The position numbers and the translations under genes were made by a program. The notes under the pieces were generated by a model. That model made no database searches and was not told where the DNA came from. It was given only the letters and a program-made list of their open reading frames with translations. A stretch of DNA of 64,000 bases, from NCBI GenBank assembly GCA_964106915.2, contig OZ066923.1; one strand, written 5' to 3'. Each line of letters begins with the position of its first letter. Positions within the stretch are counted from its first letter, which is position 1. The stretch is from Podarcis gaigeae. Taxonomy: Eukaryota. Positions 5,016-58,400 of this stretch are shown here, one piece after another.

Positions 5016-5068
5016 CCAGTTTATGCCTTATTGGGAGCACTAAAGTGGCTGATAACTGACTTCCTCAT
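5016..5068 (+). CDS. CACNA2D4: CACNA2D4 coding exon: PVYALLGALKWLITDFL(I)
   Basis: Pyrimidine tract then aacag|, donor |gtgagt. 53 nt, phase 0 to 2, in frame with neighbours. Corresponds to human PISAFLTATRWLLQELVL. Confidence 0.9.
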
Positions 5069-5845
5069 GTGAGTACAAACATTTTGGAGTTCTGGAGGGA
5101 AATATCATTAGAAGTAGAAACTATAACTGCAAGCTTTAGTAAATTTACATCAGTGTATTAATCAACTAATGCTTGTGTTCGTTAATAGGTATGAGGAAAT
5201 TTAAATTGGTGGGGCTTGATGTTACTGGCACAAACATGTTTTAAAATTCCGGTATGTGACTATAATAGCGAATAAACAAGAAAATATTCAAAACAGTCCT
5301 GAAGCAATTGACAGTCCTAACTTTTAGAAGCAGAAGCTGGGAAAGTTGCAGTCGCTATATAGATAGTCCTGTTATTCCAAAATGTAGAATTGAGATACAT
5401 CAATGGATTTCCAGTTCCATGAAACTTAGGACACACCCGTTTCTACAGGCAGGCTACTTACATACTACATTTTATTCTAAAATCAATGGAGAATGAGTAC
5501 TTGTTTTTTCTATGTAGTCCGCACACAATATGGACCATGTATTGCATACTTCTGGCCCCTGAAAAGCACTTATTGAGAAACCAGTTTCATTCAGAAAATA
5601 AAAGTTCCTTGCATATTGATTCTGCATTACCCCACAGTGTGCCCATTTGAAAACAGATGGTGGTGTGTGCATGTATGTGTATGCACATATTTCCAATGAT
5701 GTTGTGACTGGAGGTATACCAAAATCGCAATCACTGCTTCTTCATTCATCTGGGACATATGCAGGGAGGAAAGGGCATGGAGGGTTTTCAGATGTGTACC
5801 AAGTAACCATATCTACCCTTGTGGGCAGCAGGAAATTAAATCAAT

Positions 5846-5995: not shown

Positions 5996-6481
5996 TGTTG
6001 AAAGCAGCATGTTGAGCATAAGCATGAACCATTCCAGACTGAGAAAAACTGCATTTTTGTGCAGCAAATGGGTTAGTGTGTCTGCAGCCACAAACTTGTT
6101 TTAATAGTCATTCCCTCTCCCTAGGGAACTATAATTCTTTGAAAGGTTAGGGGTCATTTACAGAGTTCCCAGCAAGATAACTTCCAGAATTATTTTGGGG
6201 AGACAATACCAGTAAATCCAATACAGATTTGTGTTGTAAAAAATGGTCTTTTGTAGCAATGAGTACCAAAGCCAGTGCATCACAATGGAATAATCAGGTA
6301 AAAGGGAGATTTCGGTTCATAGGATGGAAGTGTCAGATGAGTCACATTAACAGAGACAAAATTGTGCCACTGGGCCTGTTTAATAAAACATCTGGGCCCT
6401 ATTTTAGTAAGAGAATTTCTGCATGTGAGCCTCCTTCACTTCTGGTTCAATGCTTTGTAGCACAAATACAAGAAGCACAGG

Positions 6482-6484
<3 letters not shown>

Positions 6485-6521
<37 letters not shown>

Positions 6522-6524
6522 ACA
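6485..6524. repeat. (CA)n microsatellite
   Basis: Direct read of the sequence. Confidence 0.95.
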
Positions 6525-6698
6525 CCACAGAAGATGCTACCATGTTTCTGCATCTTTTTCTTGGGTGGAGTCTGCTGCTTGTGCTGACCTTGAAAATTCC
6601 CCAGTTCGAGATAAAGACTACATGAAGAAGGAGAATGGCTTGTGCATACAAGCCATGTGATTTGCAAGCATCACACACATGGGATTAGTGCATTAGAG

Positions 6699-8663: not shown

Positions 8664-8719
8664 ATTCTTTCTGGAGTTCAACATATCTGGCTTCTGGCAC
8701 ACAGACAATTTGGCAGATG
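8664..8719 (+). CDS. CACNA2D4: CACNA2D4 coding exon: FFLEFNISGFWHTDNLAD(A)
   Basis: cttttgacag| ... |gtgagt. 56 nt, phase 2 to 1. Corresponds to human FLLEWSVWGSWYDRGAEA. Confidence 0.9.
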
Positions 8720-9347: not shown

Positions 9348-9976
9348 AGGAACTTTCTAAATATAATTAATTCTTAATATGTTTCATTTAAAAATAATAA
9401 TAAATGGCAGAAATCATTTCAAAAGCACAATCTCATACAGCAAATGTTACTTATGGTACTGCCTGCTAGGGTTTGGCAACAGTAATATGCTGGTTACATA
9501 CATTATGTTGCTTACACATATTTTAACCAGATAGAATAGCTGTCTCTCTCTAGTCCAGGGTGTACTAGACTTGTACTTGTACTTGTTTCTGAAAGCATTG
9601 CCTGCTCCTAAACATTTAGGAGTGTGCAGGCCAAAGCTTTCAGTGTCAAATATTCTCGTATTTTTAAGTAAATCACATTCACTTCACATAGGCTTATGTG
9701 AAGGAAAGGAGGATATAAGACAATAAAACATATTTCTCATGAAACAGCAGTTTAGTTAACTGTAAAGGCAGATGAATTTTAAGGAGTAGTCTCACACTCA
9801 TTGTTGCTATTGTGAACAATTATTTCTTCTTTTCACCACCATGTCATTCTTCCTCTTTCTTTCTTCATTTCCCATTCTTCCTATTCATGTGTCTTCACCA
9901 TGGAATTCTACCACCATCTTGTGATCATCATCATGGATTCATCTGCATCACATGTTATGCCATGCAACCTGTATAG

Positions 9977-9997
9977 CCAAGGCTGTTTTCCATCATG
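9977..9997 (+). CDS. CACNA2D4: CACNA2D4 21-nt microexon: (A)KAVFHH(A)
   Basis: gtatag|CCAAGGCTGTTTTCCATCATG|gtaagt. Symmetric phase 1-1. Matches the human AKSVFHH that would otherwise be missing between the flanking exons. Confidence 0.88.
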
Positions 9998-11542
9998 GTA
10001 AGTAGAATCATTATAGTGCAGCAAAAAGATCTCCATTTTCTGGAAACAGGAGAACACCCAAGCAGATTTGTCCAGAAAACTGGGGGCAATTCCTTTCCCA
10101 CTTCACAGCTGTTCAGGAATTAGCTGTGACTGCCTAGTTGAAAACAGAGATATCACTACTTGTTTAATTATTGGGCTACCACTCACTTTGTGATTGGCAT
10201 ACTTCACTGCAAGTTTCTGCGCTTGCTGGTCCAGCTGTAACCTTGAATATAAAGATGTACAGCAGCTCTAGGGATGTGCCAATATGTGCAAACAACAGCA
10301 GCTTGTGCAAAGCATGTGGATTCACCCATATAAGCCTTGCTGAAATGAACTAAGGTTGCATGGCAGCAGTTCTTACTGGGAAATAGGCAATGGGTGGAGA
10401 ATTCTGTTGTACACTGCTAAAGTGAATCTTATATTGATATTTGCAAATCTTGCCCTTCAATATTAATGATATTTTACAGCAAGCTTGGTCCATTATAAAG
10501 GAAGAAATTAGTATTTGAAAAGTTGCAAGGTTTATCAGCATTCCATCTTCTATTCTACCCCCTCCCCCCCCCCCATTTCATTCTCAATACATTTACACAT
10601 TATACAAATGCATAGGCCTTCCTATGGTGCTTTTAATCTACAATCTGATCTTGCTATCTGTCATACTAGGCCAGACCAATAGGTGCTGCTTCTGGAGTTG
10701 GTGCCTGATGTCTCAAATAATGCTTGGTATCCCAAGGTCTAGAGGTAGAGTAAGAACTTCAAGGAGTTCTTTCCTCTGTTCAATTGTTCATGAGTGGTAA
10801 TTGAATCAGGCCAGGCCTAAGTGTTTGCATGATAATTAGCATGCTACCAGTAAACCCAACAATAGCGGGATGATGAAGAAAGGAGGAAGGGTGGACTAGG
10901 GAGATGCCACTCGTGCAAGAGAAAAGACATGGTGGTGGTTGCATCATGCAGGAAGGGAGGCAACCTTAGTTGAGCCCCAACCAGAGCTCCCATGTACTAT
11001 GGTTGCTCTAAAAGGATCCATAATAATCAGAGGATCCAGGTCAAATATGGAGCTCAGAAAGAAACACGAGAGGACTTTCTTGCATTCTCAGTAGGTACAA
11101 AATGCAAGTAGAGATAATTATCTAGAGGTGGGCAAGAATCTATCAGAAAGAAACTTCAGCCTGTTTGCAGAATTGCATGAGGACAGGTGGTGATCACTCA
11201 ACTGGAAATCCAGCAAAACTGTATTATTCAGACAACTGCAGATAGTCAGGTTCTGATCACTAGAGCAACTTCAATAAATAAGTTCATTCACTTTTCTCAT
11301 AATTTATTTATGTTAGAGAAGCAGATATGATTACAGGTTGGCTGAATAAGCAGCTCTAGCCCTTTATTCCCCCTCCACCATTCAGACAAAGGCTGGCTGA
11401 TAAATGGCTTGTCTATAGAAATAAGAAATATGGGAACTGCCCTTATGTCAATAAGATATAGCTAACCAAGATAAATATTAAAACTCTTTGCATCGTTTAC
11501 ACCATTTGTCATCATGATTAGCTACCAGTAAACCCAACAACA

Positions 11543-11715
11543 GGGGATGGGCCATAGCTCCGTGGTGTAGCACCTGCTTTGCATGAAGAAGACACCAAGT
11601 TCAATCCTTATTTCCCAGGTAGGGCTGAAAATAGCTTCGAGCTGAAACCCTGAGGAGCTGCTGCCAATTAGTGTAGACAATACTGAGCTAGATAGTCCAG
11701 TAACTTCCCATGTTT
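11543..11715 (+). mobile_element. tRNA-derived squamate SINE (Squam3-like); related copies at ~490-665, ~1170-1290, ~55400-55485 (-) and ~60740-60850
   Basis: A-box/B-box-like head gccatagctccgtggtgtagcacctgctttgcatg...gttcaatcc and body ctgaaaccctg.ggagctgctgcca.t.agtgtagacaatactgagctagat, shared among the copies. Confidence 0.7.
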
Positions 11716-12014
11716 CAATATGTCACCAAAGCTTCAACATGTAAGAGCTGGGGCATGTGAGGGTACTTCCCAGGTCAGCTGAGCACCAGCCTGCCCTTAG
11801 TCAAGGAGAGAAAAAACCTTCTCTATGATATCCTGGCAAGAGGTAGTATTTCCTTCCCAAATTCCAAACATCAGCAGTTGCTAAAGCTCCTGTGGAGAAG
11901 AAGTTGTTAAACTGGTTGCTTGCTCATGAGTAGCCCAGCCAGTAATCAGCCAGGATGGGCTACAGGTAGGTAAGGGTGAACGGCCCTGAGACGGTGGTAT
12001 ATGAATTCAAATAA

Positions 12015-15000: not shown

Positions 15001-15583
15001 TTACTCAGGCTTTGTTGCTGATGCCGAAGGGCCCCCGTAACAGTTCAAGCTTCAGGGTCCCCAAAATGTAGATCTTTCCACTGCAAGTAGTCAGTTCCTA
15101 TGTTGACTAGTGGGAGCTGGGTAGTGGACTTTCTTTCTAGTAAAGGTTCCTTCTTAGGTATTTAGCTGCAGTTACTAAAGATTGGTGCTGTACTAGCCCA
15201 GCTCAGCCCGCTGTATTTCACGCAGTCACTGTCGTTAGTAAAAAGTCTTCCTGTTTCCCCCATATGAGCCACCTAGTAATGTCTTGGCCAGCTGGTTTGA
15301 TTCTAACCATGAACTAACTGCAAGTGGTTTCCCACCTGTTTGTGTGTTTTGACTTTCTAGCAGTAAACAGCCTGTCAGACTGATAGCTACATAATCTGAC
15401 CATTGGCTGAAGGGTGGCCATATTCATGCTTCTAGGGCATCCTCATACACTGAGTCTCCCACACCACCTAGTGGCTGCCAGTAATCTTCGTTTTTGGGTC
15501 AACATCTTTCCGCTTCTTTTTTCCACACCTCATTTGTTTCCTTCACCTGATTTTCTCACTCAGCCTCTTTTTCCCCATCTCAG

Positions 15584-15701
15584 CTCACAAGCACAAGAAG
15601 CACGACATGCTACAGCCATGTGACACAGAATACCCAGTGTTTGTATATGAACCTGCCATCAAAGAGACCAATGGGATTATTGAATGCGGAGACTGTCAGA
15701 A
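15584..15701 (+). CDS. CACNA2D4: CACNA2D4 coding exon: [38 protein letters not shown](K)
   Basis: ccccatctcag| ... |gtaaga. 118 nt, phase 1 to 2. Matches human [39 protein letters not shown]. Confidence 0.96.
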
Positions 15702-16104
15702 GTAAGAAATGTGCTCTCTTTCTTCCTTTTCTCCTACCTGTGCCTCTCAATTGTCTCTGGTTAGTCTGATCTCCAAGCAAACTAACTGTCCCTTGTTATC
15801 CTTGCAATGCCTCTTATTTTCCACAATTTATTCTGAATTGCCTGCAACTATGAACTATTCCAACCTCAATTCAAGTGTCCGTTAGTAACAATAGTAGTGA
15901 CAATTGCTTAGGACCCAGGTCCCTCACAGACCACTTCCTTCTGCATGAACCTGCCAGGTACCAAGGTCTGCCTTGAACACACTCTTTGCCTAGTGCACGG
16001 GTGGAGGACCTCAGACCCAGAACCACATTTTGCCCTCCAAGTCTCTCTGTCTGGTCCTTAGAACTCTCCTCAGCCACACTCTTCACCGGAAACCAGGCCT
16101 TGTG

Positions 16105-17481: not shown

Positions 17482-19133
17482 CAGGGCATTGGTTGCAGGT
17501 ACACCATACTAGGAGCAAATTAGATTTGAATACTTTGTCTTGTGCAAATAAGCTCAGCCTTGCTCTTAGCAACACATGTCTCTCCTGTGTAGCTACTAAT
17601 ACCAGATAGTTTCTGAAGCAATTCCTATGATGGTTGGTATAAGCATAATGGTTAAATCACATGGGAAAAATTCTTAGCTCAGCATGAACTCAGCAAGTGA
17701 TCTCCAGAAAATTGTTCTCTCTCTCTCCCTCCCCTCCTGCCCCATAACTTACATAATTATTGTAAGGAAGCTAAGGACTAATTCAGACATTAGTATTTTC
17801 ATGTAATGTTCACAGCTCTAATATCTAAAAGCTTCTTTTTGCAGCATTCCACACTAACACCATTGGGAATAATGGTCTGGGAGTTGGATATTTCATTCAC
17901 TTGGGTGGTTGAAGCAGGTAGAAAGCTTCCAGATCAGGGGTTCCTGAAATGTGGTCTGTGGACCACAAGTGGTTCTCAAGGTGTCTGTGAATTTGTGGCT
18001 GAAGATGGGAAATCATACATCCTTTGCATTTAATTTTGTGTCAATTTTTAATTGCATTGTTATCACTTCCTTTATTTTCTTAATATTGTATTTTATTGTA
18101 TTACAAATTGAATTCTGTAGAATTACACCTGCTACAGCAGGTAGAAATATCATTAAGTGGTTCCCTGAGACCCTCAGCAAATTTCAAGTGGACTGGGGGG
18201 TGGAGTTTGAGAACTACTGTTCTAGATGTTGCCACTTCTGTAGGGAGTGTTGCTGAAGGAAAAGCTTATCACTCAAATGTAACATTTGGACCAGCCCTAA
18301 GATTATGCCCATGAAGCATGTATTTATTATTATTATTATGCAGCTTTTAAATGATTCCATTAACTCAGACATGGTACCCAACTGGGTCCAGCTGGCAGGA
18401 TTCTGTTTGCAGTGATGGCCATTTGAATAAAGCCTCCACACGCCCACAGGAGATGATCTAAGAACTAAAACTCAGGTGCAAAATATTATTAAGATGGAAC
18501 TTTTCGCTTTTAGCTAAGTACACACCACTCATAGTCTCCCAGCAGAGGGCAGTAGAGGACTATTGGTTTTTCTGGCTGTAGGCATGCTTAGGATGCATTT
18601 TCCATTTTACTTGAACATGAACACTTTATGTTGTCATAAAATAATATTAACTATGAAAATGACACATATACAATAAATGAGAATTCAAGCTCGCGGTCCA
18701 AATGCTGCACCGTATTCATAGCTAGAGAAGGGAGCAGACACAGAATGTTGTAGCCTCAGTGTCATGTGAGCAGAGTCTGTCCAAGTCACTAGCTGATCCC
18801 TCAGTATTGGGCCACTTGCATGAAAGTCAGGACACATGGGACTTTATAGTCATTCTTTGAATGTGGCTCCCATGCATAGCTGTATAGGGTTTAATACATA
18901 CACTTTAATACACAGGTCAGTCCTGTACATACATTTACACTGGCTTGAACACACACTCTGAATCTGCAATCCTGCCTTGGCACACATAACTGTGGTGTAC
19001 TTAAGTCAATGTGCTTCAACACATACATAATTAGTTCTTCTGCAGGCCCTTCCATGCGTGAGCACTATGCTTATAATGCAGAGTACATTGAAGATGAACA
19101 CTCAAAAACCTACAACCTCTGAATTGTGCATGG

Positions 19134-19135
<2 letters not shown>

Positions 19136-19174
<39 letters not shown>
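19136..19174. repeat. (CA)n microsatellite
   Basis: Direct read of the sequence. Confidence 0.95.
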
Positions 19175-19176
<2 letters not shown>

Positions 19177-19688
19177 GTATGTAGATGCTACATTCCCATC
19201 CAGAGTCAAGTATCATATCAATCCATTTACACAAGAGCTGCACTACAGTATTAACACAAGGATTTGTCCTGCTTTATAACCCACACCTCAAGTTTCTCAA
19301 CCATTCTGCCTCCAATGCAATAAAATTGTATTTGTGTAATTGAAAGTGGCAGTCTTCAACTCAGTTCTGAATATTCCCTAATAGTATTCCCATTTATTAA
19401 CTAAATATATTTTCCTCTACCCCCCTCTTGCTGTTTCCTATTGCTTGAACCATGTGCTTGCTTGTGGTGGTGGGAAGGGAAGGGCAGTGCTATTTTTTTT
19501 TTTAGAAAAAGAAGAGTTGGAACTCACCTCCCTTGTTATCTCAGAATGGCAATGGCACCCACCTGAGAAGTGCCGGAACTGAGTTCCAACTGGAAAAAAA
19601 CCTCTGAGGAAGGGGCAAGGGGAGTATTCTATAACCTTCTGTTCTGACCATAGTCTCTTGGGGTGGGGGTATCTTCTCGCCCTTACAG

Positions 19689-19801
19689 GATGTTTGTGGT
19701 GCAGCAAATTACCAACAGCAATCTCCTGCTCCTGGTTGTGGATGCTGTATGTGACTGCAGCAACTTTCCACCTGTCCTACTGCAACCTAAAGAAGTGAAA
19801 T
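19689..19801 (+). CDS. CACNA2D4: CACNA2D4 coding exon: [37 protein letters not shown](Y)
   Basis: ccttacag| acceptor; ends at the U12-type donor |ATATCTTT. 113 nt, phase 2 to 1. Matches human [38 protein letters not shown]. Confidence 0.95.
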
Positions 19802-21614
19802 ATATCTTTCTGCTAGTAGACGTTGTACTGGGCTGTACAGTTCTTGTGGTTTATAGTTTTCCAACAGTGAATTGATGCAGAGGGTTTGCTTTAGTAGTTC
19901 TTTGGGGTGGGAAGAATTTGGCATACGTTCTAGTGGAAAGCATGGCAAAAGCAATGGCAAGTTAATGTGCTGCTAATTATGATTGCGTACTGTTGTTTGG
20001 TAAGTGCTATATGGATTGATTGTGTGCATTTTTCTAGATACCTCCTCAATTGCTGGAAAGGAGGTAGAAAGAAAAAGCACAGGGGTACCAGGCATAAGAT
20101 GGAAAGAGAAATCAGACTTGCTATTTAGTTTTTAAACTCTCTTTAGAACCTGAAAATAGTCTTCACTCTGAAGTATGCCCCCCCCCCCAGTTCTGTGTAG
20201 ATGAAGATGCTGTTGGTTTCATTAGCATTTGCAAAATAGAAGCCTAATTAAGGAAGGAGTCCTAGGTCAATGGTGGACCATGTGCTTTGTGTACCATAAT
20301 ACATTAATACTGTGTGAGATGGACCAATGGACTTATTTGCTGTAAGCCAGTGAACGGTACAGAAAGATGTTGTGCATTGCAGCTCCAAAATGCCAGGGTG
20401 AAACTGCTTTTTACGGGAGCTACTTCTTCCCATGTGGGCACGTGTTTTCTTTTTACAGTTGAAGGGACTCTTGTTCTGGAACAGAACCATGGCATAGATG
20501 CACAGGACACCAACAGGCTTCAGGGATATTTACATTGGGGCAGTGGTGTGTATGTTTGTGGGGGAAAGAGTGGTTATTTAAAAAACTTGCAAGGAAGAAC
20601 TTCTTTTAAAGGCATACACATGAAACTATGAAGACACATTTAATATAACAGTAAGTTTCTCCTTCAGTAGACAAATTTTAGCTCTGCAGCAACAGTGCTG
20701 GAAAAAAAATGTAGATTGTAGCCCTAATTTTGCTCAAGGTGGTTGTGACTAACTTATGTCCCATTGTTTCCAGTAGGTCTTACCCCTCGCTAACTGCTCC
20801 TGGAGTGGAGCTCGCTCATTAAGTGTGATCACTAGCCTTGAAAGCTGCTGCTTGGTTCTGCAGCCACCCATGATGGCTCCATTCCAACTAAAATCATGTT
20901 GAAATCAAGTTGGCCCAAGTTAAAATGAAGTTTCAATAGAATTTAAGCAGTGTTCAGATTAAACTATGCTCAAAAATCCTAGCTGATGTTAATTGAGCCC
21001 ACCTACTTACCAGGTGTAGGGACGTGGGTGGCACTGTGGGTTAAACCACAGAGCCCAGGACTTGCAGATCAGAAGGTCGGCGGTTCGAATCAACCACAAT
21101 GGGGTGAGCTCCCATTGTTCGGTCCCTGCTCCTCCCAACCTAGCAGTTTGAAAGCACGTCAAAGTGCAAGTAGATATATAGGTACCACTCTGGCGGGAAG
21201 GTAACCGGCGTTTCCGTGTGCTGCTCTGGTTAGTCATGCTGGCCACATGACCCGGAAGCTGTACGCTGGCTCCCTCGGCCATTAAAGCAAGATGAGCACC
21301 GCAACCCCAGAATCTGCCACAGCTGGACCTTATGGTCAAGGATACCTTTACTTACCAGGTGTAGCATAAGTATTTTGAGAAATGTCCTGCCTGTGACAGC
21401 ACCCTTTATGCTAGAATGAGTGCATGGCATTCCATGTGAGTAGAGGCCTTGCAGTAGCTTCATAATCAAGGGCACCTCTATGGGAATACATCTTATGACT
21501 TGTACAGCCTAGTTGTAAACTGGAATTCTGGGACAACACAGCTCCTCCATAAATGGGATTGTTTCTGATTTTCACCATTTCCCCAAACTGCTATTAACCT
21601 TAACAGCACTGCAC
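19802..21614 (+). other. CACNA2D4: U12-type (minor spliceosome) AT-AC intron of CACNA2D4
   Basis: The 5' end is ATATCTTTC (consensus RTATCCTTT). The branch site CCTTAAC lies at 21598-21604, 10 nt before the end of the intron, which terminates in AC (21613-21614). There is no polypyrimidine tract. Splicing T|AT rebuilds the Tyr of EVKY-NASVKC. Confidence 0.92.
21020..21348 (+). mobile_element. Full-length Sauria SINE with 16-bp TSD, inside the U12 intron
   Basis: TSD TACTTACCAGGTGTAG at 21004-21019 and 21349-21364. Typical head, core and tail. Confidence 0.92.
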
Positions 21615-21697
21615 ATAATGCGTCAGTGAAATGTGACAGGATGCGCTCCCAGAAGCTGAGGCGGCGACCAGATACCTGCCATGCATTCCATCCTGAG
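21615..21697 (+). CDS. CACNA2D4: CACNA2D4 penultimate coding exon: [27 protein letters not shown]
   Basis: Near-identical to human [29 protein letters not shown] acceptor, |gtaagg donor. 83 nt, phase 1 to 0. Confidence 0.96.
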
Positions 21698-22192
21698 GTA
21701 AGGCGGGTTGAGGAATTGTTGCATTTGACAAAGTAAGCTCTGCCCCACAGCAGCCATGATAATGTGCTGGCCTAAATAAAATAGGCTGGGTTTTGAAATG
21801 TCAGTCCATAGATTCATTTTTAACCACCACAAGGCTGCCTCACTTGTTTGCCTATGTGGAGGCCCTAAAAATAGGGCACAGTGCCCCCACCTGTCCATCA
21901 GTGTGTGTTTGATGTGATGTATGCAGCAAGCCTGTGCACACGTTATACATATAGCCAAGTGCATTGGGTTCCCTGCCATATGGTAGGCACTCATGAGCAC
22001 GCACATTCTGCACGGACACAGTTTATCCTGCCAGCCCTATGAATGGATCCATTGTTATCGGGAGGTGGATTTGGCCATCCCCACTGCAAAAAAAGTTTCA
22101 ATCATTTGGCCCAAGTTAAAATGAAGCTAGGCTTTAATTTTTGCTGCCCTCTAAATTCTACTTGCTGACCACATACTTGCTTTGTTTTTCAG

Positions 22193-22288
22193 GAAAACGC
22201 CCAGGACTGTGGAGGAGCGGCAGAGATTTCTGCCTCATTAGCCCTGCTCTTCCTTCCTCTGGGAACCACAGCTCTTCTCTTGCGGTGA
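22193..22288 (+). CDS. CACNA2D4: CACNA2D4 last coding exon: ENAQDCGGAAEISASLALLFLPLGTTALLLR* (GPI-anchor-signal-like tail)
   Basis: tttgtttttcag| acceptor and TGA at 22286-22288. A CGGA omega-site-like motif followed by a hydrophobic tail is typical of alpha2delta subunits. Confidence 0.95.
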   Translation, partial: ENAQDCGGAAEISASLALLFLPLGTTALLLR

Positions 22289-46627: not shown

Positions 46628-48317
46628 GGGACCAGGGTCTTCTCAAGAAAGGTTCTTATTTTCTCCGGCAAGAAGCGATGACAGGTTGGCTAGTCCTGAA
46701 AAAGGAAACAAAACTGTCATTGATAAACATGCCAGCTTATAATTACGTTAACATCCAACTTATAGTCACTTTTGAAGATGCTGAAAGCCAATCATAGAGA
46801 ATTCACATTTCCCTAGGACTGAAGTAAATAAGCTTAAGAGGAGCATCTATGGTGTTATGATCAGTTAAGCATGATCACAAGACCAGAGGTTATAACACAA
46901 GGTTCTGTCAACACACCAAAGCATGTGTCTTATACACCTCCTAAAGGGAGTGAAGACTACCAAAAACTAGTCAGAAATACTTGTAAATGTCATCATTTTG
47001 ATAGGAAAATCTTGTACTCAGCTGACATAAGCTTAAACAATTATCTTGAATGGTCTCCACTTCTGTATTGTATGTGCATGTCACAAATGGAAGACAAAGG
47101 TTTTGCAGAGACTTTATAGCTTGTAACTAATCTTCAAGCTTTAATTAGTAAGAAGCTTTAACAGATTAATCAGGCAGGGCAATTTTAATGATGAGTCAGG
47201 GAAGACACCTAGCCATTGTTCAAGGTTGTTCTTGTCTACAGTAAGCCTGCAATTTATATGGGGGCTATGATCTGGGGATCACACCTAAAGCCAAAATTGC
47301 CTATAGTCAAAATCCACTGGGTTCAGTAGCAAGTGGGATTGCCAAAGCCATTATTCCTGAAACCCTGCCCCCTTTCTGCCATGTCATACATAAAGCTGAA
47401 TGTGTGTACATTGCAGGGTTGCTGTCTTAACATACTGGAATAAAAAACTAAATACAGAAAAAGGCCTTTACATTGATGGACAGCTTTTGTATTTTAAGTT
47501 TTCTCTCAAGTCTTATGGCTCTGCATTAAATGTTCAACAATAGGACATTACTGTAACCAGAGCACTAATAAAAGCAGCAGCATGCACTACTTTCAAAAAG
47601 CAGAGAGCCCTTAGAGAATCATGCAATTCACCAAGATGCTTAACTATTTTATATAAAAACAACAACCATCAACCTTTCTTCTGCAGTCTCCTGGAGGAAA
47701 TTTTAATGCCTGACATACTAATACCAAGCATTCCTAGGTCTTTCTGCTTTATGGAGAGGAGCCCATCTGAGGTCACTTTCAATGTAACAATGAGAATGTG
47801 TACAGTTCCTTTTTGTCAATGGGGGAAGTAACACTTTGCTAACAAAGAGACATCAGTAATACCAAGACTCCAGCAGACAGAATGTGTGTCCCCAACAGCT
47901 GCTTTTTGTTACCTGTAAACTGTTGATAAACACAATAGCTGAGTTTTTCAAACAGCAAATTGCCTAGGCAGACAACAAACTATTAACAGACAAAGAAAAA
48001 GGTGTCCAGGGACTAGTAAAATTCCAGAGTTGTCTCCAACACAGAACTTACATACAACATGGCCTCTGATAAAATGCAATGGCAATATGGACAGCCAGTG
48101 TGCCTGGCTGTTAACCAGAAGGTTAGTGGCTCAAGCCCACCCACCAAGGGATGGCTATGGGCAGGATTTCTGCATTGTAGGGGGTTGGACTAGATTATTT
48201 TTAGGGTTCCTTCCAACTCTATAATTCGTGTTTGAGGTTTCTTTTGAGAGCCAGGAGATTATTTACAGAACAGTTCTTAGTAGTGTATAGTGTGTGTATG
48301 TTTGTCTATCTCTCTTT

Positions 48318-48331
48318 CACACACACACACA

Positions 48332-48376
<45 letters not shown>
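48318..48376. repeat. Compound (CA)n(CT)n microsatellite
   Basis: Direct read of the sequence. Confidence 0.95.
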
Positions 48377-48379
<3 letters not shown>

Positions 48380-49528
48380 CCCTGTCAACTCACACTGGCC
48401 AGGGCGGAAGGTGGTTCGAGTTTCACTATGACAGCACCAGGGCTGGTGTAGCTGAGGATCTCTTGGAGATCTGCAGAACTTTGGAATGCCTTCAGCATTC
48501 CATTTCAGGGCTTTCTTGTTAGCTATTACCTTTCTGCCAGATAATGTCAGCAGTAAATAGAGGTGCATACAATATTTAACCTTTAGCACTAGAAGCACAT
48601 TTGCACCTTTGGTCATGGAAATGCTCTTCCGTGTGCCACAGTCATTTTAAGTTATACAACCAAGGATTGAGGCAGCAGATAAGTAAGATTACATCACCCA
48701 TGTTAACTGAAATACATGGCTAGAAAAACACCAGCTCTCCTTTCCACAAATTTGTAAGATTGATAGAAGGAATGTGCATTGAAAAGTGTTACAAAAATGC
48801 TTTCCTGTTCCCTACTTTCTGTTAACAGTTATTGCCATTATTGACCATTAGGGGAAGAGAGTATAAGCATCTTAAAACTCAACTAACTAGCTATCTTAAT
48901 ACTACAGTGATGCAAGCAGAGCAACTTCAGAGTATGCAACAACAGACCTTGAACAACTGGTTCAGACATATACAGCAATTAAAGGGTGTGACTGTCCAGC
49001 AATGTAGCCATTATAGACTAGTAGCTTTTTCATGTGGAATCAGATATAGAACTGTGTTTGCTCTGCTTACAAGTGTGAGGTCATGTGCTAATTTTAGTTA
49101 TAACTTGGGTTTGCAAATTCCAAGTTGCAAAAGGTCTGCCCTTTGTACTTTTTATGCAGTAGAGTTACACAAGAGATAAGATATGTGGTTTATATAATAG
49201 ATTTCTCAGACAATTAGAATCTTGTATGGAAGAGGGCTGAATCACAAAGATAAATACACAAGTTAATATTTGTATAAGTCATGTCCACTGGTACAGGGTG
49301 AACCATATAATGTCATTCTAATATAATGTTACAGTTGAAGAAGGGCATTCTTGGAAATATATTAAGTGATGCTATCTGAACATTAATCCCATATGTACAT
49401 TCCAGATCAAGATAAGAATCAATTCGTGCACTAAAAAAATGCACTTTAGGCAGCATAAATATGGCATGGCTGTGAGCAATGACTCCAATGGAAGATTCAC
49501 AGGCATGGCCTGACAATATTCCTCATAG

Positions 49529-56400: not shown

Positions 56401-57459
56401 TACTTATTCATTAAGTTCAATTACACTTACTCCAAGGAGTGCAGAGGGTTTGAACATTAGTTTTGCACATTCTCAGGAAAATATTGCAGTACCAATTTTA
56501 CAAAAGGCCAGGTGTGTTAAGATTTCTGAGTAAAGCAGTATTTCCAAATATAAAATACATGCAAACAGTTGTCATTTACAAATATTTCAAATATGTGTAA
56601 GCTGTACCTTCTGCCAACAGAAACAAGTACACAATTGTTGATACCAAGCCTTGTCCATAATAGCTACATTTTAAGCCTAGCACACTCTCCACCAGAGTAA
56701 AATAGTTCTCTGGTTGTACTTGTACTTTCTCACATCAGTATTTTATCAGTTTCATTTTCTTGTCCAAGTTTACTCCTAGTGTACAGTACAAAATACCCAG
56801 ACAACTGACATTCTCAATAGAAATGTTGAGATTCACAAGTAGCCCTCTGCATGTTTGTTGAAACGGAAGTCCTCAAAACTACTTAACACTTCATTTCCTC
56901 AAATTCTGCTAACAGCTGTGAAGTAGTTTACAAAAACAGGACCAGTGCTTTTCACCTCAAGTGTTGTCACCATTTGGGAAGCAGGAGCCATCTCCTAAAG
57001 TGATGATTAACAATTAAAACTACCCAAATGTGTGTGGAAAACCAAGAGCAGGTCCATGTTTACTCAGAAGTAAGTCAGGCTGCCCAAGGGGCAGTGTGTT
57101 AAGTGTGTTTAGGATGATAACCATGGTTACTTTGGGGGGGGGGTAGGAGAGCGGGAATGGAGTTGCTTGATTTTTAAGTTCTTTCTTTTCGTCTTAAACT
57201 TCCAGAGATATCAACTAAGAGGCCACAAAACCACACACCGTAATAAAATTCGTGAGCCCTTTAAAAAGGTGCCACAAAATTTCGCTGGTTTTGCGTCTTT
57301 AGGGCGGCAGAAAAGCCTTTTTTAAAAAATGCCACTGTTTGCTTGTTAATTAATAATTCCATTACTTCAGTATACCCAAAGACTCAAACTATACAGGTGT
57401 ATTAGCTACAGGATACAACACTGAAGGGAGTTGGTCATTTATTTAAAAAGTAAAACTCT

Positions 57460-58400
57460 TGGGCATTTCGCGAGAGGCCGAAAGGCGTTCGCAGCCACTT
57501 ATCACAACAGCTCCCGGGGTGGGAGAAGAGGCGATAAGTGACTTGCCCAAGGTCAGCAGCAGCGCCCAAGAGGAGGGGCTCAAGTGCAGGAAATCGAGGT
57601 CAACCGGCAGAGAGCGCCCCGCGAGCACCACCACCCCCGCGGCCCAAGGAGGCCCTGAGCGAGGAGGTCGGAGGTCGCACCCCCCACCCCGCGGCCTAAG
57701 CCGGCCGAGGCCCCGCCGCCCGCTCCTGAGGGGGCGCCCCAGCCCCAACCCAGAGCCCCCCAGCCCGGCTTACCGGACGCGCCTTCACTCCGCTGCCCAG
57801 CTGTGCCCGGCGCTGAGGGGGGTCGGAGGGAGGGAGTCCCCACGGTGCCGCCGGCGCCTCCGGGAATCCCGCCCCCTCCGCCTTCACTCGCCACCTCTTT
57901 CAGCTCTCCCGTCGCCTCCCCTTTGCCCCGGAGCGCGTCATCATCGCAAGAGGCTCGGCGAGCCAATGGGCGGCGGAGCGTCGTAATCGGAGTACGCGCA
58001 GGCGTCAGCCACGCCGGCAGGACGTGCTCGGGGGAGGAGGGGCGGGAGGCTCAGCCCAAGGGCACCCTGGGACGTGTAGTTTTCCCGGAGGCGGGCGGCT
58101 TGAGCGCGTGACCCTGCCGAAACCGAAGGCGCCGCCTCCGCATTGGTAGGAAAGTAGGTCGCGGGCTCTTAAAGCGTCCTTTCGCGCCAGGCGTTAGTTC
58201 TGGCTCGGCGGCCGCGGCGTAAAGTGCGTAATGGGTGAGCGCTGCTTACGGAAGGAGCGGAGTCGCGCGGGGCCGTTGCTCAGGCGGCGGTTGTTTTTCA
58301 ACGGCGCGCTCGCGCGGTTTGTTGATTTCAAAGTACGAGGAAGGCGGCGAGGTTCCAAAAGGAGGAGTGGGAAGGGCCTCAGGGCAGCGACAGATGAAGG
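57460..58400. promoter_or_regulatory. ADIPOR2: CpG-island promoter of ADIPOR2
   Basis: Abrupt GC/CpG-rich segment in an AT-rich background. CCAAT at 57963-57967, ATTGG at 58142-58146, GC box near 58039-58047, CRE half-sites CGTCA at 57936-57940 and 58003-58007, ZNF143-type motif at 58062-58080. Confidence 0.9.
57774..57930 (-). other. ADIPOR2: Probable non-coding exon 1 (5'UTR) of ADIPOR2; 5' boundary approximate
   Basis: Strong donor CCG|GTAAGC at 57774/57773 inside the CpG island, followed by G-runs. The TSS cannot be fixed from sequence alone. Confidence 0.7.

What the first reader, a model, noticed from the sequence alone, without database searches (positions are those of the whole stretch)
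9833..9997. Dense NOVA-type YCAY cluster directly upstream of a CACNA2D4 microexon
Seen: 17 YCAY tetramers (TCAT/CCAT/TCAC/CCAC) in the 131 nt at 9833-9963, against about 2 expected for uniform composition, plus two more inside the 21-nt exon. I noticed no comparable cluster elsewhere in the window. Established: NOVA1/2 bind clustered YCAY, and binding upstream of or within a cassette exon usually represses inclusion. Inference: a purpose-built switch that skips the microexon in NOVA-expressing neurons and keeps it in NOVA-low cells, such as photoreceptors, where alpha2delta-4 mainly acts.
Basis: partly seen in the sequence, partly recalled or inferred. Interest (0 to 1): 0.8.

Follow-up and report, generated by a model that had tools for sequence, protein, structure and literature searches.

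The report
Conserved YCAY cluster before CACNA2D4 microexon
A dense, vertebrate-conserved run of UCAY motifs sits just upstream of the known photoreceptor-specific 21-nt exon of a lizard CACNA2D4 gene; it is very probably a splicing control element, it looks like a NOVA silencer, and that idea has already been proposed for retina microexons as a class but never tested.

Summary
There are 17 YCAY in 9833-9963, the maximum in the window on either strand (next best 10, mean 2.2). Two more lie in the exon.

The 21-nt exon is real. An RNA contig joins 9997 to 15584 exactly. It is the orthologue of the published photoreceptor-specific Cacna2d4 microexon of mouse and zebrafish.

The cluster is conserved. 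Eight species from gar to mammals carry 11-19 YCAY in the 200 nt upstream, all above composition-matched shuffles. Control tetramers are not enriched. A related lizard shows no listed substitution in the block, while the flanks differ by about 7%.

The cluster lies in a conserved AG-free zone of 117-192 nt and is unstructured. UCAY is specifically enriched; other branch-point-like tetramers are not.

NOVA itself could not be tested here. The net NOVA-map score points to silencing in all eight species but passes the published threshold in only two. In mouse, tissues other than photoreceptors skip the exon, so NOVA cannot be the only switch.

Ciampi et al. (2022, 2024) already proposed NOVA repression of retina microexons as a class.

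Verdict: a real conserved regulatory element. The NOVA-silencer reading is plausible (about 0.5) and is a new example of a known kind.

The parts
8664..8719 (+). Upstream constitutive CACNA2D4 exon (..FFLEFNISGFWHTDNLAD, ends in phase 1), 5' splice site GTGAGT
9790..9974 (+). AG-exclusion zone of 185 nt before the microexon's 3' splice site. It is the longest AG-free gap in the window and implies a distant branch point
   Evidence: It is 117-192 nt in eight species; other exons of the gene have 18-64 nt
9833..9963 (+). YCAY (mostly UCAY) cluster of 17 motifs, the finding itself
   Evidence: No listed substitution in a related lizard. Homologous blocks in L001 and L002 by BLAST. Not structured
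9825..9920 (+). CU-rich stretch with nine UCUU (PTBP-type motifs) interleaved with the YCAY motifs
   Evidence: The enrichment is significant only in the lacertid and Crotalus
9977..9997 (+). 21-nt microexon. It adds the seven residues AKAVFHH in frame between AD and HKHKK (its first two bases complete the Ala codon; its last base starts the next). It carries two YCAY forced by the Phe-His-His codons
   Evidence: Joint 9996/7 > 15583/4 in a 2847-nt RNA contig
9998..10004 (+). Strong 5' splice site GTAAGTA, identical in 7 of 8 species. UAG motifs lie at +6 and +17
15458..15583 (+). Second, weaker YCAY cluster (8 in -150, 11 in -200) before the downstream exon. This is an enhancer-type position in the NOVA map
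15584..15702 (+). Downstream constitutive exon ([40 protein letters not shown])

Best explanation
The block is the core of an ancient intronic splicing control region in front of the photoreceptor-specific 21-nt microexon of CACNA2D4.

The microexon has a strong 5' splice site. Its 3' side is unusual: about 185 nt without any AG, so the branch point is probably far upstream. That zone is filled with single-stranded UCAY motifs interleaved with CU-rich runs.

The most likely mechanism is silencing. In neurons that express NOVA1/2, these KH-domain proteins coat the UCAY array between the branch point and the 3' splice site, hinder recognition of the 3' side, and the exon is skipped. In non-neural cells PTBP1 on the CU runs probably does the same job. 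Photoreceptors lack NOVA and have little PTBP1, so the exon is included, probably with help from SRRM3 or Musashi.

Shown here: the cluster, its position, its deep conservation, its motif specificity, and the use of the exon.

Inferred: which protein binds, and in which direction it acts.
For: - Cluster statistics.
- Conservation: YCAY counts in -150/-200 are 17/19 (window), 13/16 (Phrynosoma), 13/15 (Crotalus), 11/13 (hornbill), 8/12 (pigeon), 12/15 (pangolin), 6/11 (rodent) and 10/12 (gar). Each beats composition shuffles at p <= 0.004, while YACY, YTAY, YAAY and YGAY do not.
- Motif specificity: TCAT is the most enriched tetramer (37 against 6.2). About 70% of 113 motifs have U at each Y position, the most frequent form being UCAU.
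- Not branch-point look-alikes: pooled UCAY is 78 against 20 expected (z = 13), while UUAY and UAAY are depleted and CTRAY is not enriched.
- Purifying selection: a related lizard shows no listed substitution in 9831-9965 against about 7% in the flanks.
- Published cluster score (Jelen 2007, my implementation): 1.34-1.68 in all eight species. The net score is negative, meaning silencing, in all eight.
- The region is unstructured (z = -0.29).
- Literature: upstream or exonic YCAY binding gives skipping. NOVA1 is absent from photoreceptors and the exon is switch-like there. The exon is not among those listed as lowered in Msi1/2 knockouts. Zebrafish inclusion is 0% in brain, about 83% in muscle and 68% in eye. 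NOVA motifs are enriched upstream of retina microexons as a class.
Against: - No CLIP, knockout or minigene data for this exon were found.
- The net NOVA-map score passes |0.6| only in hornbill and pangolin; it is -0.26 in the window.
- In mouse the exon is skipped in all tissues examined other than photoreceptors. NOVA loss alone therefore cannot explain inclusion.
- Dinucleotide-preserving shuffles nearly reproduce the count.
- The rodent cluster is weaker and lies further from the exon.
- Gar also has a downstream cluster in an enhancer-type position.
- The tissue of the one RNA run that shows inclusion is unknown.
Confidence: 0.5

Rival explanations
1. The UCAY/CAUC array is read by a factor other than NOVA, for example another KH-domain or CAUC-binding protein such as a PCBP-type or YBX1-type factor. 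It may act as an enhancer that photoreceptors (and fish muscle) need for inclusion, rather than as a silencer.
For: - CATCA, TCATC and TTCAT are shared by all eight species, and mammals repeat a longer GUGACAUCAY-like unit. The recognised word may therefore be longer than YCAY.
- C-rich patches accompany the cluster.
- A 21-nt exon with a weak proximal pyrimidine tract needs activation.
- PCBP2 and SRRM3 are published photoreceptor splicing factors.
Against: - UCAY clusters are the published NOVA binding site.
- PCBP2 activated only one rod exon (BSG) in the ASCOT study.
- The assignment of CAUC to YBX1 is from my memory only and was not tested.
- Zebrafish brain skipping fits a neuronal repressor.
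Confidence: 0.2
2. The block is a core splicing signal: an extended polypyrimidine tract with a distant branch point. The constraints on it (no AG, few G, pyrimidine-rich, some adenosines) produce YCAY as a by-product, and there is no tissue-specific reader.
For: - The AG-exclusion zone of 117-192 nt is conserved in all eight species and is the longest AG-free gap in the window.
- UCAY fits the loose branch-point pattern yUnAy, and TTCAT is the top 5-mer.
- Dinucleotide-preserving shuffles give 14.7 against 17 observed.
Against: - Only the C-containing form is enriched. UUAY and UAAY are depleted, and the strong branch-point form CTRAY is not enriched.
- A pyrimidine tract does not need 20 CA against 5 TA.
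- The exon is demonstrably tissue-regulated in mouse and fish.
- Constitutive exons of the same gene show nothing similar.
Confidence: 0.15
3. Repression is mainly by PTBP1/2 on the CU-rich runs, as for many neural and rod exons, and the YCAY motifs are secondary.
For: - Nine UCUU lie in 9825-9920.
- A long AG-free zone is typical of PTB-regulated exons (from my memory of Gooding et al. 2006).
- It would explain skipping in mouse non-neural tissues.
Against: - UCUU enrichment is significant only in the lacertid and Crotalus, not in the other species tested.
- It does not explain skipping in brain, where PTBP1 is low.
- Zebrafish muscle includes the exon.
Confidence: 0.1
4. A chance low-complexity stretch without function.
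For: The region is pyrimidine-rich and contains a short CAT run.
Against: - Motif density is conserved across roughly 400 million years in eight species.
- A related lizard shows no listed substitution in the block, against about 7% in the flanks.
- It is the maximum of the window.
Confidence: 0.02

Closest known systems
Photoreceptor-specific 21-nt microexon of mouse and zebrafish Cacna2d4 (Murphy 2016, PMC4991804; Matalkah 2022, PMC9509328)
   Same: - Same gene, same length and same position, directly before the exon that encodes NGIIEC (the mouse reverse primer encodes it).
- The same peptide family, AK[AST]VFH[HF], from sharks to mammals.
   Different: - Those papers describe the exon and its tissue pattern. 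They found no phenotype when it was deleted, and they do not describe the upstream YCAY cluster.
- Tissue specificity in the lizard was not measured here.
NOVA intronic splicing silencers just upstream of a cassette exon (NISS2 type; for example Dab1 exons 7b/7c and Gphn exon 7a in Jelen 2007, PMC2014790)
   Same: A cluster of three or more close YCAY within 200 nt upstream of the alternative exon, conserved in orthologues. The predicted outcome is lower inclusion in brain.
   Different: - NOVA binding and NOVA dependence are unproven here.
- The net map score is below the published cut-off in 6 of 8 species.
- The cluster spans about 130 nt inside a very long AG-free zone.
Proposed NOVA/RBFOX/ELAVL repression of retina-specific microexons (RetMICs) in non-photoreceptor neurons (Ciampi 2022, PMC9303857; Ciampi 2024, PMC10987577)
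   Different: - The published evidence is a class-level motif enrichment, and the authors state the model as a hypothesis.
- CACNA2D4 is not named in the text I could read.
- UGC motifs, which mark SRRM3/4 targets, are not conserved near this 3' splice site.
PTBP1-repressed neural or rod exons with CU-rich upstream tracts and distant branch points
   Same: A long AG-exclusion zone and UCUU runs upstream.
   Different: UCUU enrichment is not conserved, whereas UCAY enrichment is.

Membership tests
NOVA-dependent intronic splicing silencer (NISS2-type YCAY cluster) | At least three closely spaced YCAY; cluster score above the published cut-off (Jelen 2007 algorithm) | tested here: met
   S = 1.66 in the window and 1.34-1.68 in seven orthologues. 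Half-scores are 0.67-0.84 against the cut-off of 0.6. This is my own implementation of the published rules.
NOVA-dependent intronic splicing silencer (NISS2-type YCAY cluster) | Position within about 200 nt upstream of the alternative exon | tested here: met
   The cluster spans -144 to -14 relative to the 3' splice site. The binned profiles peak in -150..-1 in most species, and at -200..-100 in the rodent.
NOVA-dependent intronic splicing silencer (NISS2-type YCAY cluster) | Conservation of the cluster at the orthologous position | tested here: met
   Eight species from gar to mammals, each with p <= 0.004 against shuffles.
NOVA-dependent intronic splicing silencer (NISS2-type YCAY cluster) | Net map score (enhancer minus silencer positions) of 0.6 or more in absolute value | tested here: inconclusive
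   The score is negative in all eight species (-0.07 to -0.67). It passes 0.6 only in hornbill and pangolin and is -0.26 in the window. The region borders I used are approximate.
NOVA-dependent intronic splicing silencer (NISS2-type YCAY cluster) | NOVA binds the RNA (CLIP) and inclusion changes when NOVA is removed or added | not testable with these tools
   No paper held links NOVA to this exon. The held supplements of one NOVA2 study do not list the gene.
NOVA-dependent intronic splicing silencer (NISS2-type YCAY cluster) | Lower inclusion in brain than in NOVA-poor tissue | not testable with these tools
   Literature only. Zebrafish inclusion is 0% in brain, about 83% in muscle and 68% in eye, whereas in mouse the exon is skipped in all other tissues examined. 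The tissues of the lizard runs are unknown.
Retina/photoreceptor-specific microexon (RetMIC) | Frame-preserving exon of 3-27 nt, conserved in vertebrates and actually spliced | tested here: met
   The exon is 21 nt and skipping keeps the frame. The peptide is conserved from shark to mammal. An RNA contig carries the exact joint.
Retina/photoreceptor-specific microexon (RetMIC) | Inclusion restricted to photoreceptors | not testable with these tools
   Published for the mouse orthologue. Not measurable for this lizard.
Retina/photoreceptor-specific microexon (RetMIC) | UGC motifs close to the 3' splice site (SRRM3/4) and UAG downstream (Musashi) | tested here: inconclusive
   - UGC within -60: three in the window and the rodent, one each in hornbill, pigeon and pangolin, none in Phrynosoma, Crotalus and gar.
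- UAG within +80 is present in 6 of 8 species.
PTBP-repressed exon with distant branch point | Long AG-exclusion zone upstream of the 3' splice site | tested here: met
   185 nt in the window and 117-192 nt in the orthologues.
PTBP-repressed exon with distant branch point | Conserved cluster of UCUU/CUCUCU motifs | tested here: not met
   UCUU is enriched only in the lacertid (p = 0.004) and Crotalus (p = 0.014) among the six species tested. There is no CTCTCT.

The most novel reading that the evidence does not exclude
The array is a competition device. The UCAY words serve both as a spread-out set of weak, distant branch points for the microexon and as NOVA sites, so NOVA silences the exon by occupying the very adenosines the spliceosome would use. 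This arrangement would have been kept since before the split of ray-finned fish and tetrapods. A variant reading is that the true reader is an undescribed photoreceptor activator of a longer GUGACAUCAY-like word.
Probability: 0.15. Interest if true: 0.6.

Novelty: new member of a known kind. Interest (0 to 1): 0.4.

Why it matters
What makes some microexons photoreceptor-only rather than pan-neuronal is an open question. The leading idea is repression by NOVA, RBFOX or ELAVL in other neurons, and it rests on class-level motif statistics.

This locus offers an unusually clean single test case:
- It has one of the densest possible YCAY clusters.
- The cluster is conserved from gar to mammals.
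- It sits in front of an exon that is already known to be switch-like, is not listed among the exons lowered in Msi1/2 knockout mice, and already has mouse and zebrafish assays.

The functional stakes are modest, because deleting the exon in mouse gave no visible retinal phenotype.

Tried and rejected
- **Pfam.** A scan of the two flanking exon pieces gave nothing; they are too short.
- **Contig look-ups.** Look-ups of the Varanus fragment P0004 and of the unidentified fragment P0013 found no record. The full-length turtle and gharial genes are too long to fetch. The frog locus had no DNA. As a result no turtle, crocodilian, frog, shark, zebrafish or mouse intron was compared.
- **Tandem repeat.** Rejected.
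- **Dispersed repeat.** Rejected.
- **RNA structure.** Rejected, z = -0.29.
- **SRRM3/4 UGC hallmark as the main explanation.** Weakened, because UGC near the 3' splice site is not conserved.
- **Generic branch-point look-alikes.** Rejected.
- **Sequencing runs.** No run is on record as RNA, and tissues and organisms are coded. All laid runs are contigs, so PSI and the skipped isoform could not be measured.
- **Earlier notes of this scan.** Nothing at this place.
- I did not build or search a joined (spliced) model; exons were searched singly by reference. I did not fetch the chimpanzee fragment P0113 or any contig I took for human.

Full report
**Observation**

The stretch 9833-9963 holds 17 overlapping YCAY: 7 TCAT, 5 CCAT, 3 TCAC and 2 CCAC. 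The exon 9977-9997 holds two more.

No other 131-nt window on either strand of the 64 kb exceeds 10 (mean 2.2, sd 1.6). Shuffles that keep the block's composition (T53 C40 A26 G12) give 4.0, and none of 20,000 exceeded 12.

Shuffles that keep the dinucleotides give 14.7 (p = 0.075). The signal is therefore that A is nearly always preceded by C within a pyrimidine-rich tract (CA 20, TA 5 in -150).

The block is not a tandem repeat, is unique in the window, and does not fold better than shuffles (z = -0.29).

**Gene and exon**

tblastn with turtle and gharial alpha2delta-4 places the last CACNA2D4 exons on the + strand. These include 8664-8719, 15584-15702 and 19687-19803. The other exons are known only approximately, near 1550-1639, 5016-5070, 21610-21697 and 22181-22288.

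The window peptide is identical to a Podarcis lilfordi fragment, so the genome is probably a lacertid lizard's.

Reading across the junctions, the 21-nt unit adds seven residues, AKAVFHH. Skipping it keeps the frame. The same peptide, AK[AST]VFH[HF], appears in predicted alpha2delta-4 proteins from sharks, rays, turtle, gharial, birds, squamates and mammals.

A 2847-nt contig of run X1 (guessed to be RNA) carries the joint 9996/7 > 15583/4 with GT..AG ends and all 21 exon letters.

I searched exons singly by reference. I did not build the joined model.

**Identity with a known exon**

Mouse Cacna2d4 has a 21-nt photoreceptor-specific, switch-like microexon (mm10 chr6:119,345,430-450). The reverse RT-PCR primer for it encodes NGIIEC, the motif of the exon that follows here. 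The published findings are:
- The exon is conserved down to cartilaginous fish.
- Its deletion gave no retinal phenotype.
- It is not among the exons listed as lowered in Msi1/2 knockouts.
- In zebrafish the authors report inclusion of 0% in brain, about 83% in muscle (100% in 3 of 4 samples) and 68% in eye.
- NOVA1 protein is absent from mouse photoreceptors.

**Conservation**

I fetched seven orthologous loci through fragmentary gene models and found the microexon in each:

| Locus | Species |
|---|---|
| L001 | Phrynosoma |
| L002 | Crotalus |
| L003 | hornbill (Buceros) |
| L004 | the rodent Scotinomys |
| L005 | alligator gar (Atractosteus) |
| L006 | pangolin (Smutsia) |
| L007 | pigeon (Patagioenas) |

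YCAY counts upstream of the microexon:

| Species | -150..-1 | -200..-1 |
|---|---|---|
| Window (lacertid) | 17 | 19 |
| Phrynosoma | 13 | 16 |
| Crotalus | 13 | 15 |
| Hornbill | 11 | 13 |
| Pigeon | 8 | 12 |
| Pangolin | 12 | 15 |
| Rodent | 6 | 11 |
| Gar | 10 | 12 |

The locus means are about 2.4-2.9 per 150 nt, except in the rodent locus, where a repeat inflates the background.

Every species beats composition shuffles (p <= 0.004). The control tetramers YACY, YTAY, YAAY and YGAY do not. TCAT is the most enriched tetramer (37 against 6.2) and TTCAT the most enriched 5-mer. About 70% of 113 motifs carry U at each Y position.

Sauropsid sequences align in blocks. Gar and mammals hardly align, yet they keep the motif density.

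A related lizard (run X10) has an unspliced contig over 9756-10461 with 42 differences, 39 of which are listed. None of those listed falls in 9831-9965 apart from a 4-nt deletion in a CU run. The flanks differ by about 7%.

**Architecture**

The 185 nt before the 3' splice site contain no AG. This is the longest AG-free gap in the window. The same zone measures 117-192 nt in the orthologues and 18-64 nt before other exons of the gene. This implies a distant branch point.

UCAY fits the loose branch-point pattern. Pooled over the eight species, however, only UCAY is enriched (78 against 20, z = 13). UUAY and UAAY are depleted, and CTRAY is not enriched.

UCUU is enriched only in two squamates. 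UGC near the 3' splice site is not conserved. UAG downstream is present in six of eight species.

**NOVA map**

I implemented the published cluster score. The upstream region scores 1.34-1.68 in all eight species.

The net score is negative, meaning silencing, in all eight. It passes 0.6 only in hornbill and pangolin. The reason is a second cluster before the next exon (15458-15583), which counts as an enhancer. My region borders are approximate.

**Comparison with what is known**

Ciampi et al. reported NOVA, RBFOX and ELAVL motifs enriched upstream of retina microexons. They proposed that these factors repress such exons in non-photoreceptor neurons, and they state this as a hypothesis. I found no paper that links NOVA to this exon.

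**Verdict**

- That this is a conserved cis-acting splicing element: about 0.85.
- That it is a NOVA silencer: about 0.5.

The mouse data show that tissues other than photoreceptors also skip the exon, so a second layer is needed. Tissue-specific PSI in the lizard could not be measured, because the runs are contigs of unknown tissue.

Noticed in passing
window 11550-11749: Very high summed contig depth in all four laid runs (46-274), with many loose ends at 11642-11701. This looks like a dispersed, transcribed repeat (SINE-like) inside the CACNA2D4 intron.
   Followed up: no
window 15458-15583: A second YCAY-rich stretch (8 in -150, 11 in -200) lies before the exon downstream of the microexon. 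A similar score occurs in Phrynosoma. It sits in an enhancer-type position of the NOVA map and lowers the net silencer score.
   Followed up: partly
window 57400-58150: A G+C-rich stretch with long Pro/Arg/Gly-rich open frames. It is probably a CpG island or the first exon of a neighbouring gene, well past the end of CACNA2D4.
   Followed up: no
window ~6480-6560, ~19100-19160, ~48290-48430: Dinucleotide microsatellites (CA/TG and TC/GA types), seen as THTH.. and SLSL.. open frames.
   Followed up: no
L007 (pigeon) and proteins P0101-P0107, P0002: Several deposited bird gene models omit the microexon. The pigeon model P0101 appears to read through its 5' splice site (AKAVFHHSHKSTPTAHKHKK). These are probably annotation errors, not evidence of skipping.
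   Followed up: partly
L004 (Scotinomys), whole locus: The locus holds a very YCAY-dense repeat (up to 47 per 150 nt; 17% of 45-nt windows score as high as the microexon's upstream region). This makes locus-wide background statistics useless there.
   Followed up: no
L006 (pangolin) 2650-2849; L004 4427-4626: In mammals the upstream region repeats a longer unit close to GUGACAUCAY, 4-5 times in pangolin. The mouse CRISPR guide 1 from the published exon knockout matches this unit by eye.
   Followed up: partly
turtle and gharial CACNA2D4 gene ranges: A 370-aa leucine-rich-repeat gene lies on the opposite strand inside a CACNA2D4 intron in both species. It is upstream of the part covered by this window.
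   Followed up: no
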